A stretch of 63,413 nt of DNA, the filler included, from Octopus bimaculoides (lineage: Eukaryota), in NCBI RefSeq assembly GCF_001194135.2. It is 6 parts of 6 records of this genome, joined end to end, with 100 filler letters (N's around TTAATTAATTAA, not from the genome) between each part and the next. Parts side by side here need not be neighbours in the genome. Positions count along the whole stretch, not along the records: positions 47,522 to 61,622 come from NC_068999.1; 5 more parts are not named here. One strand, given 5' to 3'. The notes beneath the pieces are model-generated. The model was not told the DNA's origin and did not search any database. It worked only from the letters and a program-made list of their open reading frames with translations. Both the position numbers and the translations under genes were made by a program. Every line of letters begins with the position of its first letter. Positions within the stretch are counted from its first letter, which is position 1. Positions 48,084 through 50,562 of this stretch are shown piece by piece.

Positions 48084-49417
48084 TTAAAATATTTCAGTTT
48101 CGAGTGCTTGTCGTTCATTTTGTCGCTGCTGTTGTGTATGTGGTACTGGCTGACTCGGTTGAGCAACATTGTCTCGACTCCGGGTAACAGGTCTCGGTGC
48201 TGGAGTGGGTTTGTACTGTCTATGATGGGGTTGTGTTATTGAGTCTAAGTTCTCCTGGCTTCCTCGCATCGGCTGACGTCGATAGGGATCAGTAGCATTA
48301 GGGTTGTATAAAACACCACTATAATCATTGTAATTCCTAGGAATGGGTTCATGGCTAAAAGGTTCAGGACTATTTATACGGTCCCTGCTGCCCCTTTCAT
48401 AAGTGTTACGCTGGAGATAAGCAACACCAGGGTTCAATGTTTGGAATGTTTCTGGAATCCTTTCTGGGACATTTCTGAAAGGATAACCGTATCGATCATC
48501 TGCAAGATTTTCACGACTTCCAGAGTTTGAAGTTCTTCCTTCATTGGGGACTATATCTATTGTTCTTGGCACTATTCCAGGTCTTCGTGGGGAGACACTG
48601 CGAACGTGGGGACTGGGCCTGGCTGTTCCATCCAAGGATTCTTTGCTTCCATCACGTGACCTTTGGTTTATGCTTTTGGAGAAACTTTTGAATTCCTCAG
48701 AAGGTTCATAATTATAGAGTGGTGGTGGCGGTGAAGGTGGTTTCTCTAGAGCAGTCTTCATTTGGTTTATGATAGGTTTCTTGTCAAACTCGTTGCTATA
48801 CAAAGAATGTTCACTTGGTGGACTGTTTTGCCTGTTCTGACCCAAGTTAGCATAAATGTCCCACTCTTTGGGTTGTAAGTGCTGCTGGTTCACTTGCTCT
48901 TCTCTCTCTCTCCACACCTGATTCATGACATTTGTATTATAACGAACAGGTGGAGGCTGGTCCTTATCTACATTGTCTACACTAAGATAGCTTTCATCAT
49001 CCGTAAAACTAATATTGTTGCTGTCAGTGTCATCATTGTGATTGTATGGGATTATTGTGGTCCCTGGAGTTTTAATGGGAAATGGAGGCGAGATTTCCGT
49101 CGCCTCTGTATTAAAAGTGTTGAACTTAGACTTATCTAATGAGTTTATACTGATCTGGTCATCCAGTGAGCCCACAAAGCTGATGTTTGTTTGGCTGTTC
49201 TGAATGTTGCTCTTTGACCAGTTAGAGGTCATCTGAGATCGAGATCTGGCCGAAGAGCGTAAGGAGGCACAACGCTGAAGTCGCATGTCTTTGCGTATTT
49301 TAGACTTTTTGAGCCAAAGTACAATCAATATAATGATGATGATGACAAGTACACTGAAGATGCTGGTTGTTAATGCAATGACGAGTGTGTAATCGGTTGT
49401 CTTGGCAACGAAAGGAT
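48084..49417 (-). CDS. terminal coding exon: transmembrane helix plus long cytoplasmic tail of a C-type-lectin-domain receptor
   Basis: Acceptor tttctctcttgtttcag| at 49418, phase 1. It encodes (D)PFVAKTTDYTLVIALTTSIFSVLVIIIIILIVLWL-KKSKIRK (TM plus positive-inside cluster), then the 414-aa ORF to ETEIF* (TAA at 48084-48086). This is the longest ORF in the window that is neither N-gap nor microsatellite. Confidence 0.85.
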
Positions 49418-49511
49418 CTGAAACAAGAGAGAAAGTTCAGTTTTAATATAGAGTTTCATTCCACATTTGATCAGTTCGTTATACAACACAAACTAATTTA
49501 TTTATTTGGAT

Positions 49512-49650
49512 CAGGGGTTCTCAGCCATTTCTTATCTATGTACCCCCTTGGATTACTATTTTATTCCGGTCGACCCCCAAAGCCATTCAATGTTTAAAAA
49601 CTAGTTTTATAGAAACTCCTTTCAAAATTCCTAATTTGTTTTTTCACACC
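49512..49650 (+). mobile_element. hAT-type MITE left end (copy 1)
   Basis: Begins CAGGGGTTCTCAGCC and is near-identical to 49992-50123. Confidence 0.65.
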
Positions 49651-49683
49651 TTAACTTGTGTAGGTTAAACTATGTATATACTT

Positions 49684-49903
49684 GTATTCTTTTCCACTCT
49701 GGGCACAAGGCCTGAAATTTTTAGGGAGGGGGGGACAGTTGATTAGATCGACCCCAGTATGTAACTGGTACTTAATTTATCGACCCCGAAAGGATGTAAA
49801 GCAAAGTCAACCTTGGCGGAATTTGAACTCAGACTGTAAAGACAGATGAAATACCGCTAAGCATTTCACCTGGCGTGCTACCGTTTCTGCCAGCTCACCG
49901 CTT
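49684..49903 (-). mobile_element. SINE family B, full length with 13-bp TSD
   Basis: TSD TATGTATATACTT at 49671-49683 and 49904-49916. Confidence 0.9.
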
Positions 49904-49991
49904 TATGTATATACTTCTATTAAAAGTTTGTTATTTAAATCTCCTTTACTCAAAGTTTTACGGACATAAAAGCATATCTGATTCTTAAGAA

Positions 49992-50123
49992 CAGGGGTTC
50001 TCAACCATTTTTTTTTTCTATGGATCCCATTAATTTCTATTTTATTCTGGTCGATCCCCCATAAACATTCACTGTTTAAAAACTAGTTTTATAGAAACTC
50101 CTTTCAAAATTCCTATATTGTTT
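49992..50123 (+). mobile_element. hAT-type MITE left end (copy 2), running into a gap
   Basis: Begins CAGGGGTTCTCAACC and shares TTTAAAAACTAGTTTTATAGAAACTCCTTTCAAAATTCC with copy 1. Confidence 0.65.
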
Positions 50124-50354
50124 NNNNNNNNNNNNNNNNNNNNNNNNNNNNNNNNNNNNNNNNNNNNNNNNNNNNNNNNNNNNNNNNNNNNNNNNNNNNN
50201 NNNNNNNNNNNNNNNNNNNNNNNNCCCAAGTTTAAAATAGACAATAAATAAATAAATGATATTGATGATGACGATGAGGAGGAGAAGGAGAACGATGACG
50301 ACGACGATGAAGATGATGAGGGATAGAAGACTGCAAGGAGTGAATAGTTCTCAC

Positions 50355-50562
50355 CTGTTTCACAAATAAACGGCAGCAAAAGTAAATGGCAGCTTTCGTG
50401 TGTTTCAGCAAAATCATCGTAAAATATGCCACACATCCCGACCGAGCTGGGTTTGTTCATCCAAATCCTCGACTTTGTATCATAGCCAAAGTCAGAATCT
50501 ATGAGCAATTTTTTAGCAAATGATTCCATGTCTTTACTCTCCATGAGTTCAGCACCTAAAGA
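50355..50562 (-). CDS. internal coding exon: C-terminal two thirds of a C-type lectin-like domain
   Basis: Acceptor ttcttttttgttcag|TCT (phase 0) and donor G|gtgaga (phase 1); 208 nt. It encodes SLGAELMES...RIWMNKPSSVGMCGIFYDDFAETHESCHLLLLPFICET. The phase joins the next exon (G+AT = Asp). Confidence 0.8.

What the first reader, a model, noticed from the sequence alone, without database searches (positions are those of the whole stretch)
48084..50562. Unrecognised single-pass receptor with a non-canonical C-type lectin domain
Two exons with matching splice phases join into CTLD(C-terminal part)-short stalk-TM-~405-aa tail. The domain keeps the LGAxL, IW, and C-x13-C-x8-C/PFICE framework but has no EPN/QPD or WND motif and a very short long-loop region. 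Established: such CTLDs usually do not bind sugar via Ca2+. Inference: this is a protein-ligand, adhesion or immune receptor, possibly mollusc-specific. The ORF track shows only the tail and hides the lectin exon inside a gap-spanning ORF. I could not find the upstream exon(s), which may lie in N gaps or beyond the scaffold.
Basis: partly seen in the sequence, partly recalled or inferred. Interest (0 to 1): 0.7.

Follow-up and report, generated by a model that had tools for sequence, protein, structure and literature searches.

The report
Last exons of octopus bark-beetle/Anakonda gene
The supposed new small lectin receptor is really the last two coding exons of the octopus version of a giant, well-known cell-junction protein (Bark beetle/Anakonda), cut off from the rest of its gene by a gappy, locally inverted genome assembly, so it is ordinary.

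Summary
On the minus strand, exon A (50562-50355) and exon B (49417-48084) have canonical splice sites and matching phases. The 101-N gap lies inside the intron. [quoted passage not shown]

It is not an unrecognised or mollusc-specific receptor. The window is Octopus bimaculoides chromosome CM046619.1. The product is already annotated as XP_014788921.1 / UniProt A0A0L8FKZ0 ("C-type lectin domain-containing protein"). It is 82% identical to residues 2499-3017 of O. sinensis "protein bark beetle-like" (3017 aa).

A profile built only from cephalopod sequences reaches proteins named bark beetle in Lingula, Tubulanus, Schistocerca and a drosophilid, always at their C-terminal CTLD-TM-juxtamembrane part.

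The missing N-terminal CTLD exon is the last true exon of O. bimaculoides LOC106878360 ("protein bark beetle", 2530 aa). It lies about 27.5 kb away on the opposite strand, with several gaps in between. The gene model is therefore split, most likely because an assembly block is mis-oriented.

The family's domain is a real CTLD by profile and predicted fold. It has no long loop and no Ca2+/sugar-binding motifs. The likely role is the membrane anchor of a tricellular septate-junction organiser. Novelty is low.

The parts
50355..50562 (-). Penultimate coding exon ('exon A', 208 nt). It encodes 69 codons plus the first base of Asp70: SLGAELMESKDMESF...LLLLPFICET. This is the C-terminal two thirds of the Bark-family compact CTLD (alpha-1 helix end, alpha-2, WIGL-like IWMN, beta-3 to beta-5, and Cys 4-6 of the six invariant Cys).
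   Evidence: Polypyrimidine tract plus CAG acceptor in phase 0, and GTGAG donor. 47% identical to the Sepia exon and 43% to the L001 exon, with the same boundaries. Invariant W65, C75, C89, C98 and E99 in the 35-sequence family alignment.
49418..50354 (-). Last intron (nominal 937 nt, true length unknown). It contains the 101-N assembly gap 50124-50224, two copies of a ~135-nt repeat, and a SINE-like stretch.
   Evidence: GT...AG boundaries. The gap is wholly intronic. Repeat pair 49574-49641 / 50056-50123 is 91% identical. No tRNA or Rfam hit.
48084..49417 (-). Last coding exon ('exon B', 1334 nt including the TAA stop at 48086-48084). It encodes a 10-aa stalk (DPFVAKTTDY), the TM helix and a 409-aa cytoplasmic tail.
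   Evidence: CAG acceptor; the phase completes Asp70. Open for 444 codons. Tail relatives P0002 (73% id), P0003/P0004 (31%, E 2.7e-29 and 1.2e-24), and O. sinensis 2568-3017.
49311..49388 (-). Single transmembrane helix, residues ~80-105 (TLVIALTTSIFSVLVIIIIILIVLWL).
   Evidence: The only Kyte-Doolittle peak, 19-residue mean 3.1. It aligns with the TM of crab SpBark and other Bark proteins.
49233..49316 (-). Conserved basic/serine juxtamembrane motif, residues 104-131: WLKKSKIRKDMRLQRCASLRSSARSRSQ. Family consensus: W..KS[KR].R....[LF][EQ]RR.S[IL]R.S.RS.
   Evidence: Conserved from cephalopods to insects, crustaceans, nematodes and brachiopods.
48087..48107 (-). C-terminal heptapeptide ALETEIF. 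It is the cephalopod form of the family's conserved C-terminal (PDZ-ligand-type) motif ...PLETAM / ...ETEI / ...ETDI, with one extra terminal hydrophobic residue.
   Evidence: C-termini of ~50 family members listed. A PDZ-binding motif is reported for fly Anakonda in PMC5509417.

Best explanation
Window 48084-50562 (minus strand) holds the last two coding exons of the Octopus bimaculoides orthologue of Drosophila bark beetle (bark) / Anakonda (aka). This is a ~3000-aa type I membrane protein of protostome septate junctions.

The full protein has a signal peptide, a triple-repeat ectodomain (SRCR domains plus right-handed beta-helices), a membrane-proximal compact C-type lectin-like domain, one TM helix, and a disordered cytoplasmic tail that ends in a conserved ETx-hydrophobic motif. 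The window encodes the final 513 residues: the C-terminal two thirds of the CTLD, the TM helix and the tail.

The preceding exon (NCAPGWTAEKFRCFRYMGGVQTYYGAVRYCQ, phase-0 GTAAG donor) is the last genuine exon of the separately annotated gene LOC106878360, 'protein bark beetle'. It lies ~27.5 kb away on the opposite strand of the same chromosome record, across several gaps. The two models are one gene, split most likely by a mis-oriented block in the scaffolded assembly.

Inferred mechanism, taken from fly work and not tested in octopus. The giant ectodomain self-associates where three cells meet and organises the tricellular septate junction. The CTLD+TM segment encoded here is the part that co-precipitates with the proteolipid protein M6 in Drosophila. 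The tail is dispensable for vertex targeting and probably docks cytoplasmic scaffold proteins through its C-terminal motif and its conserved serine/arginine juxtamembrane stretch. The CTLD lacks the long loop and all Ca2+/carbohydrate ligands, so it acts as a protein (or non-classical ligand) binding module, not as a classical lectin.
For: Identity of the locus. The product equals XP_014788921.1 on CM046619.1 of GCA_001194135.2.

Orthology.
- The top hit of a whole-library HMMER search, using a profile made only of cephalopod sequences, is XP_029656084.1 'protein bark beetle-like isoform X1 [Octopus sinensis]', 3017 aa. Its residues 2505-3017 match at E 2e-220. blastp gives 82% identity.
- The same search reaches 2500-3400-aa proteins near their C-termini. 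These are named 'protein bark beetle' in Tubulanus (3.9e-14), Lingula (3.6e-12), Schistocerca (3.1e-7), Scaptodrosophila (3.7e-6) and Gordionus.
- A mollusc-only profile hit an arthropod Bark fragment (P0014) at E 6.8e-15 with 95% coverage. P0014 is 40% identical to the published crab SpBark, E 7e-76.
- The Sepia orthologue aligns collinearly with SpBark through the NWWG motif, CTLD, TM and juxtamembrane region, E 3e-27.

The missing exon. P0112 (LOC106878360, 'protein bark beetle', SRCR + Beta_helix) ends ...GAVRYCQ and then reads 31 codons into an intron that begins GTAAG. 2499 real residues + 513 = 3012, against 3017 in O. sinensis.

Opposite strands and intervening gaps. The O. vulgaris model CAI9736676.1 starts inside that upstream exon and runs through exon A, so the exons are collinear there.

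CTLD nature.
- The family profile hits solved CTLDs: PLA2R 3.5e-13, DEC-205 3.7e-11, NKG2D 4e-7.
- The AF2 model of the O. sinensis domain (88% identical to the O. bimaculoides domain) has pLDDT 87.9. Foldseek top hits are NKp80, NKR-P1, LLT1, CLEC9A and LOX-1, TM 0.73-0.81, with 393 hits at E<=0.001.
- There are six invariant Cys.

Function in fly. Triple-repeat ectodomain, vertex localisation independent of the cytoplasmic domain, and the CTLD+TM fragment co-immunoprecipitating with M6 (PMC11698045). C-terminal PDZ-binding motif and tricellular septate-junction role (PMC5509417).
Against: - In the only O. bimaculoides chromosome record available, the two exons lie on the strand opposite to the rest of the gene. 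Read literally, the assembly says they cannot be spliced to it. I infer mis-orientation but could not test it with reads.
- No transcript data were available, so the junction from the upstream exon to exon A in O. bimaculoides rests on orthologues.
- The C-terminus ETEIF has one residue more than the family's ETx[MI], so PDZ binding of the classical kind is not assured.
- All functional statements are transferred from Drosophila. The one functional study of a non-insect Bark (crab SpBark, PMC6716108) reports microbe/LPS binding by the CTLD and a role in phagocytosis instead.
- Pfam Lectin_C does not recognise the window's exon.
Confidence: 0.92

Rival explanations
1. Stand-alone gene, as in the reader's view and the current NCBI model LOC106882674. 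On this reading the two exons make an independent ~507-513-aa single-pass receptor with a truncated lectin-like ectodomain.
For: NCBI and UniProt list it as a separate 507-aa protein starting at an internal Met. In the chromosome record it lies on the opposite strand from bark.
Against: - The model has no signal peptide and starts in the middle of a domain. It lacks three of the six invariant cysteines and the whole N-terminal beta-hairpin and alpha-1. A 64-residue ectodomain could not form the disulfide-bonded fold.
- Exon A begins at a strong 3' splice site in phase 0. This fits the phase-0 donor of the bark exon ...RYCQ|GTAAG.
- O. sinensis, O. vulgaris and Sepia proteins are continuous across that junction.
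- 2499 + 513 residues reproduces the orthologue's length.
Confidence: 0.03
2. The inversion in O. bimaculoides is real. The bark gene would be truncated after the N-terminal CTLD exon, and the two exons in the window would be a decaying or re-used remnant.
For: The orientation conflict in GCA_001194135.2.
Against: - A 513-codon frame is intact with canonical splice sites.
- It is 82% identical to O. sinensis, and every family motif is kept: Cys 4-6, PFICE, the juxtamembrane motif, PPSPPPPL, SRENL/SQENLD and LETEIF.
- The interval is full of gaps, including a 100-N join 1.7 kb after the bark model and a 2165-N gap abutting the piece. This is typical of blocks whose orientation is poorly determined.
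- A secreted Bark lacking its TM anchor would be expected to be non-functional (inference).
Confidence: 0.04
3. Same gene, but its main role in cephalopods is immune: a scavenger-receptor-like pattern-recognition receptor whose CTLD binds microbial surfaces and promotes phagocytosis, rather than a junctional role.
For: Crab SpBark is reported to be induced in hemocytes by bacteria. Its recombinant CTLD binds microbes, LPS and acetylated LDL, and knock-down reduces phagocytosis (PMC6716108).
Against: - The CTLD has no Ca2+/carbohydrate site or long loop.
- The genetic evidence in Drosophila is for tricellular junction assembly.
- The CTLD, TM and tail are conserved across phyla, as expected of a core structural component.
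- The two roles are not mutually exclusive.
Confidence: 0.1

Closest known systems
Drosophila Bark beetle / Anakonda (bark, aka), the tricellular septate-junction organiser, and its orthologues named 'protein bark beetle' in RefSeq
   Same: - Type I topology.
- A ~100-aa membrane-proximal CTLD with six conserved Cys ending PFICE-x-D, directly before the TM helix.
- The conserved juxtamembrane motif KS[KR]xR...RRxS[IL]RxSxRS.
- A disordered tail ending in LETx-hydrophobic.
- The rest of the octopus gene carries SRCR and beta-helix repeats.
   Different: - The cephalopod tail is longer (409 aa against ~230-330 in most arthropod sequences seen here).
- It ends ETEIF/ETEIL, one residue longer than ETAM.
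- Its juxtamembrane stretch reads RCAS instead of RRNS.
- No functional data exist for any mollusc.
Scylla paramamosain SpBark (GenBank MH595537; PMC6716108)
   Same: The only non-insect Bark studied experimentally. It has the same CTLD (Cys2512-Glu2608, 'long form', six Cys), TM and juxtamembrane motif. The octopus product aligns to it at 33% over 80 residues, and the Sepia orthologue at 27% over 342 residues, E 3e-27.
   Different: It was studied as an immune receptor. Its published ORF stops before the family's conserved C-terminus, which is encoded in its annotated 3'UTR.
NK-receptor-type C-type lectin-like domains (NKp80, NKR-P1, LLT1, CLEC9A, LOX-1, CD72)
   Same: These are the best structural matches of the family's domain (TM 0.73-0.81). 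They are Ca2+-independent CTLDs that bind proteins, not sugars.
   Different: Those are type II receptors with ~120-130-residue domains that keep a long loop region. The Bark domain is ~100 residues, type I, with the loop reduced to ~7 residues. Sequence identity is only 12-23%, and Pfam Lectin_C is at or below threshold.
Vertebrate CTLD-TM-tail type I proteins (layilin, chondrolectin, CD302); from my own knowledge, not tested
   Different: None of them appeared in any search here. The octopus fragment has this layout only because the upstream ~2500 residues are missing from the piece.

Membership tests
Bark beetle / Anakonda family | Significant sequence similarity to proteins named bark beetle, located at their C-terminal end | tested here: met
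   A cephalopod-only profile gives whole-library E-values of 2e-220 (O. sinensis bark beetle-like, residues 2505-3017), 3.9e-14 (Tubulanus), 3.6e-12 (Lingula), 3.1e-7 (Schistocerca) and 3.7e-6 (Scaptodrosophila).
Bark beetle / Anakonda family | Membrane-proximal compact CTLD with six conserved Cys, followed within ~10-25 residues by a single TM helix (type I) | tested here: met
   The window encodes Cys 4-6, W65 and PFICE-T-D, then a 10-aa stalk and one TM helix. Cys 1-3 are in the upstream exon at L003:30998-31093.
Bark beetle / Anakonda family | Huge ectodomain with three SRCR domains and right-handed beta-helix repeats (triple repeat) | tested here: met
   Not in the window. It is present in O. 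bimaculoides LOC106878360 (2530 aa; SRCR and Beta_helix Pfam hits) on the same chromosome, and in the 3017-aa O. sinensis protein that is continuous with the window's product. I did not count all three SRCRs myself.
Bark beetle / Anakonda family | Conserved juxtamembrane motif W..KS[KR].R....RR.S[IL]R.S.RS | tested here: met
   WLKKSKIRKDMRLQRCASLRSSARSRS, with RRNS changed to RCAS.
Bark beetle / Anakonda family | C-terminal PDZ-binding-type motif (E-T-x-hydrophobic-COOH) | tested here: inconclusive
   The LETE-I core is conserved, but cephalopods add one residue (ETEIF/ETEIL). This places E, not T, at position -2.
Bark beetle / Anakonda family | Localisation at tricellular septate junctions; needed for the epithelial barrier; interacts with M6 and Gliotactin | not testable with these tools
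   Known only from Drosophila (PMC5509417, PMC11698045).
[quoted passage not shown] | Pfam Lectin_C (PF00059) match above the gathering score | tested here: not met
   No hit for exon A or the spliced protein at E<=10. The full Sepia domain scores 16.9 bits against a cut-off of 22.6. The best family member reaches E 3.7e-6.
[quoted passage not shown] | Profile similarity to solved CTLDs | tested here: met
   The family profile A2 hits 153 PDB sequences, almost all CTLDs, mostly through the N-terminal half: PLA2R 3.5e-13, DEC-205 3.7e-11, NKG2D 4.1e-7, EMS16 5.2e-7.
[quoted passage not shown] | CTLD fold (two helices, two antiparallel sheets, disulfides C1-C4 and C2-C3) | tested here: met
   AF2 model of the O. 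sinensis orthologous domain (88% identical; the octopus composite itself could not be submitted): pLDDT 87.9, pTM 0.80. There are 393 Foldseek PDB hits at E<=0.001, and all of the top 50 listed are CTLDs, TM up to 0.81. An earlier model built with a 3-sequence alignment failed (pLDDT 36).
C-type lectin sensu stricto (Ca2+-dependent carbohydrate recognition domain) | Long loop region with an EPN/QPD motif, and a WND motif in beta-4, forming Ca2+ site 2 | tested here: not met
   Only 7 residues (KPSSVGM) lie between IWMN and Cys4. There is no EPN, QPD or WND anywhere in the domain. Structural alignments show ~25 target residues with no counterpart.

The most novel reading that the evidence does not exclude
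The opposite-strand placement could be real in O. bimaculoides, or the last two exons could have their own promoter. The cell would then make a 'mini-Bark': half a CTLD, the M6-binding TM region and the 409-aa tail, with no ectodomain. Such a protein could act as a regulator or decoy of tricellular-junction assembly.

A weaker variant: the cephalopod-specific extra C-terminal residue (ETEIF/ETEIL instead of ETAM/ETEI) re-wires the tail to a different scaffold partner.
Probability: 0.04. Interest if true: 0.45.

Novelty: already known. Interest (0 to 1): 0.12.

Why it matters
There is little here for biology. Bark/Anakonda is a described family, and sister octopus species already have full-length models named 'bark beetle-like'.

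The practical value is curatorial.
- O. bimaculoides LOC106882674 ('uncharacterized protein'; UniProt 'C-type lectin domain-containing protein') and LOC106878360 ('protein bark beetle') should be merged into one ~3012-aa gene.
- The block carrying the last two exons in GCA_001194135.2 (about CM046619.1:4.519-4.533 Mb) is probably inverted.
- Anyone counting 'novel lectin receptors' or CTLD genes in cephalopods would otherwise count this fragment as a separate gene, and O. vulgaris has a similarly split pair of models.
- The alignment also documents how well the CTLD-TM-juxtamembrane-C-terminal module is conserved across protostomes. In flies this is the segment that binds M6.

Tried and rejected
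- Pfam and PDB sequence searches with exon A alone gave no Lectin_C hit. The only PDB hit was a zinc-finger chance match at E 1.3.
- I looked for the N-terminal CTLD exon in the 11 kb upstream inside the piece, using tblastn with the Sepia, O. sinensis, crab and other Bark proteins plus Cys-pattern regexes. Nothing was found. It could in principle have sat in one of six gaps (1988 N), but it was then located elsewhere.
- A word-indexed homologue search with the 1223-aa Sepia ectodomain saturated at 8000 candidates and gave only 3 hits, none named.
- The first AF2 run (arthropod CTLD, 3-sequence alignment) was useless, pLDDT 36.
I therefore modelled the 88%-identical O. sinensis domain.
- tRNA and Rfam scans of the intron and the whole piece found nothing.
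- I suspected a mariner-like remnant near 53.05-53.28 kb and other ORFs in the piece. Pfam found nothing, so I dropped this.
- A literature search for Anakonda in molluscs or cephalopods found nothing relevant.
- Layilin, chondrolectin and CD302-type receptors never appeared in any search, and I rejected them as relatives.
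Full report
**1. What is in the sequence**

On the minus strand there are two exons with textbook signals.
- Exon A (50562-50355) follows a 28-nt polypyrimidine tract ending in CAG and is followed by GTGAG.
- Exon B (49417-48084) follows ...CTCTTGTTTCAG and ends with TAA at 48086-48084.
- Exon A starts in phase 0 and ends one base into a codon. G + AT makes Asp70.
- The joined CDS is 1542 nt, giving 513 codons and a stop.

The flagged gap (50124-50224) lies inside the intron, 130 nt beyond the donor. 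Continuity of a frame across it does not matter. The 268-aa 'ORF' 50113-50919 that spans it is an artefact of N read as X.

Nothing is hidden in the gap. The O. sinensis, O. vulgaris and Sepia proteins read PFICE-x|DP... across the junction without an indel. An unrelated cephalopod contig (L001, ENA ERZ21867824) has the same two exons with the same phases, there separated by about 7 kb.

The product has three parts:
- 69 residues of lectin-like domain (LGAEL ... IWMN ... C-x13-C-x8-C, ending PFICE);
- a 10-residue stalk and a single hydrophobic helix (residues ~80-105);
- a 409-residue tail rich in Ser, Pro, Asn, Arg and Gln.

**2. Where it comes from and how it is annotated**

The spliced product, minus its first six residues, is identical to XP_014788921.1 (LOC106882674, 'uncharacterized protein', Octopus bimaculoides). 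This is also UniProt A0A0L8FKZ0, 'C-type lectin domain-containing protein'. The locus is on chromosome record CM046619.1 of GCA_001194135.2, where window coordinate + 4,471,499 gives the record coordinate. The splice and the lectin label are therefore already public. 'Unrecognised' is not correct.

**3. What it really is**

Close relatives of the tail came up first. One of them sits in the same 90% cluster as a 1625-aa Sepia pharaonis protein. That protein carries two SRCR domains, a beta-helix, a complete ~100-aa lectin-like domain (ECPAGWLLDNSRCYKYF...PFICEKD), a TM helix and a tail ending ETEIL. This architecture is that of Drosophila Bark beetle/Anakonda (PMC5509417 and PMC11698045).

I tested the idea three ways.

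(a) *Comparison with a published Bark.* The sequence of crab SpBark was recovered from the supplement of PMC6716108.
- The Sepia orthologue aligns with it collinearly through the pre-CTLD NWWG motif, CTLD, TM and juxtamembrane region (27% over 342 residues, pairwise E 3e-27). It has further collinear matches in the SRCR and beta-helix regions.
- The octopus product aligns from LPFICE through the TM helix to the RxS[IL]R[AS]SxRS motif (33% over 80 residues).

(b) *Mollusc-only profile.* A profile made only of mollusc sequences hit an arthropod fragment, P0014, at E 6.8e-15 in a 5.8-billion-sequence database. P0014 is 40% identical to SpBark (E 7e-76).

(c) *Whole-library HMMER search with a cephalopod-only profile (A3).* There were 95 hits at E<=0.001.
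- The best new hit is a 3017-aa protein whose residues 2505-3017 match at E 2e-220.
- Many others are 2500-3400-aa proteins matched near their C-termini.

Their public names are:
- 'protein bark beetle-like isoform X1 [Octopus sinensis]' (XP_029656084.1);
- 'protein bark beetle' in Lingula, Schistocerca and Scaptodrosophila;
- 'bark beetle-like' in Tubulanus and Gordionus.

The window's product is 82% identical to O. sinensis residues 2499-3017.

**4. The missing exon and the split gene**

The same cluster contains O. bimaculoides XP_014783038.1 / XP_052830711.1, 'protein bark beetle' (LOC106878360, 2530 aa).
- Its last 31 residues (VRKFNQ...) are intron read-through.
- The genuine sequence ends ...NCAPGWTAEKFRCFRYMGGVQTYYGAVRYCQ, immediately followed by GTAAG (L003:30998-31093, which is record 4,494,290-4,494,385).
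- That exon supplies the N-terminal beta-hairpin, alpha-1 and Cys 1-3 of the CTLD. It ends in phase 0, exactly what exon A needs.
- 2499 + 513 = 3012 residues, against 3017 in O. sinensis.

The bark model lies on the plus strand (4,473,293-4,494,481). The two exons of the window lie on the minus strand at 4,519,583-4,522,061. The interval between them holds a 100-N gap 1.7 kb after the bark model, then gaps of 2435, 431, >2083, 113 and 2165 N. The last of these abuts the low end of the piece.

In O. vulgaris the 534-aa model CAI9736676.1 begins inside the upstream exon (MGGVQTYYGAVKYCQ|SLGAEL...), so the exons are collinear there.

I conclude that the gene is one unit, and that the block holding its last two exons is most likely mis-oriented in the scaffolded assembly. 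This is an inference. Reads were not available to test it.

**5. Is the domain a CTLD?**

Pfam Lectin_C does not see exon A or the spliced protein, even at E<=10. It sees complete family domains only weakly: Sepia scores 16.9 bits against a cut-off of 22.6, and the best member reaches E 3.7e-6.

Other evidence says it is a CTLD.
- A five-sequence family profile hits 153 PDB sequences, essentially all CTLDs (PLA2R 3.5e-13, DEC-205 3.7e-11, NKG2D 4e-7, EMS16 5e-7).
- A 35-sequence alignment of Bark CTLDs from many phyla shows six invariant Cys, plus A26, W65 and E99, and near-invariant G5, Y16, G18, P95 and F96.
- With that alignment, AlphaFold2 models the O. sinensis domain confidently (pLDDT 87.9, pTM 0.80). 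This domain is 88% identical to the O. bimaculoides composite, which the tool would not accept.
- Foldseek returns 393 PDB matches at E<=0.001. All of the top 50 listed are CTLDs, led by the Ca2+-independent NK-receptor type (NKp80, NKR-P1, LLT1, CLEC9A, LOX-1; TM 0.73-0.81).

The targets have about 25 residues with no counterpart in the model. These correspond to the long loop region, which in Bark is reduced to about 7 residues. There is no EPN/QPD or WND motif.

**6. How it most likely works**

*Shown here:* orthology, topology, the fold of the family's domain (modelled on the O. sinensis orthologue), and conserved motifs. The conserved tail elements, from cephalopods to insects and nematodes, are:
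- the juxtamembrane stretch W..KS[KR]xR....RRxS[IL]RxSxRS (octopus WLKKSKIRKDMRLQRCASLRSSARSRS);
- a S..S[IVL][DE]KS.[FY]N island;
- PPSPPPPL;
- SRENL/SQENLD-type repeats;
- the C-terminus LETx-hydrophobic.

*Taken from Drosophila literature (inference for octopus):*
- Anakonda's triple-repeat ectodomain mediates homophilic contacts that need three adjoining cells, and it organises the tricellular septate junction.
- Vertex targeting needs the ectodomain, not the cytoplasmic domain.
- A short fragment consisting of the CTLD, the TM helix and a tag co-precipitates with the proteolipid protein M6.
- The C-terminus is a PDZ-binding motif.

The window therefore encodes the membrane anchor, probably the M6-contacting module, and the scaffold-docking tail of the octopus junction organiser.

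A competing or additional role comes from the crab. There the recombinant Bark CTLD bound microbes and LPS, and knock-down reduced phagocytosis.

**7. Rivals**

- *Stand-alone receptor (confidence 0.03).* It would lack a signal peptide and half of a disulfide-locked domain, and its first exon starts at a strong acceptor.
- *Real inversion leaving a remnant (0.04).* This is hard to reconcile with an intact 513-codon frame, canonical splice sites and the retention of every family motif.
- *Immune role (0.10 as the main role).* This is compatible with the same gene identity.

**8. Novelty and score**

The family, its domain layout and full-length octopus orthologues are already in public databases. 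What is new is only that two O. bimaculoides gene models are one gene, and that an assembly block is probably flipped. Interest 0.12; 'already known'.

The most novel reading still open is a truncated 'mini-Bark' expressed on its own, or a cephalopod-specific re-registered C-terminal ligand. Its probability is about 0.04.

Noticed in passing
window 48087-48107 (C-terminus ALETEIF); compared with P0017, P0006, P0004 and ~50 family members: Bark-family proteins end ...PLETAM in the arthropods and Trichinella, and ...ETEI / ...ETDI in the brachiopod, the nemertean and P0005 (organism not identified). All of these have Thr at position -2. Cephalopods alone end ...LETEIF or ...LETEIL: one extra hydrophobic residue that shifts the PDZ-ligand register so that Glu is at -2.
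   Followed up: partly
Crab SpBark cDNA (MH595537) as printed in the supplement of PMC6716108, nt ~9451-9483 of the annotated 3'UTR: The published ORF stops at ...REFPSPR. However, the 3'UTR encodes ...SQSQPLETAM-stop in another frame, which is the family's conserved C-terminus (compare P0068, ...GRSKSQPLETAM). The cloned cDNA probably retains an intron or carries a frameshift, so the published protein is likely truncated at its C-terminal end.
   Followed up: partly
CM046619.1 4,473,293-4,494,481 (+) versus 4,519,583-4,522,061 (-); loci L003 and L002: O. bimaculoides 'protein bark beetle' (LOC106878360) ends by reading 31 codons into an intron after ...RYCQ|GTAAG. Its true last two exons lie ~27.5 kb downstream on the opposite strand, beyond several N gaps. 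This is a probable orientation error of a block in the chromosome-scale assembly.
   Followed up: partly
O. vulgaris proteins CAI9736677.1 (2327 aa) and CAI9736676.1 (534 aa): The O. vulgaris annotation also splits the bark gene into two consecutively numbered models, but cuts it inside the upstream CTLD exon. That exon is collinear with exon A in this species.
   Followed up: no
Sepia (Acanthosepion) pharaonis CAE1269060.1, 1625 aa (P0006): This gene model has only two SRCR domains and jumps over a large part of the ectodomain, compared with the 2800-3100-aa orthologues. It is probably an exon-skipping prediction error.
   Followed up: no
window 49510-49641 and 49990-50123 (intron), with ~49700-49900 between them: Two copies of a ~135-nt element (68-nt core 91% identical, 482 nt apart) flank a SINE-like, tRNA-related stretch. 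The upper copy abuts the 101-N gap. ARAGORN and Rfam report nothing.
   Followed up: partly
window 50563-61622 and 47522-48083: The rest of the 14.1-kb piece is microsatellite-rich (TG/CA, TA, TATG-type runs, homopolymeric codon-like runs) with six further N gaps. It shows no coding signal: Bark tblastn, Pfam on the longer ORFs, and Rfam were all negative.
   Followed up: yes
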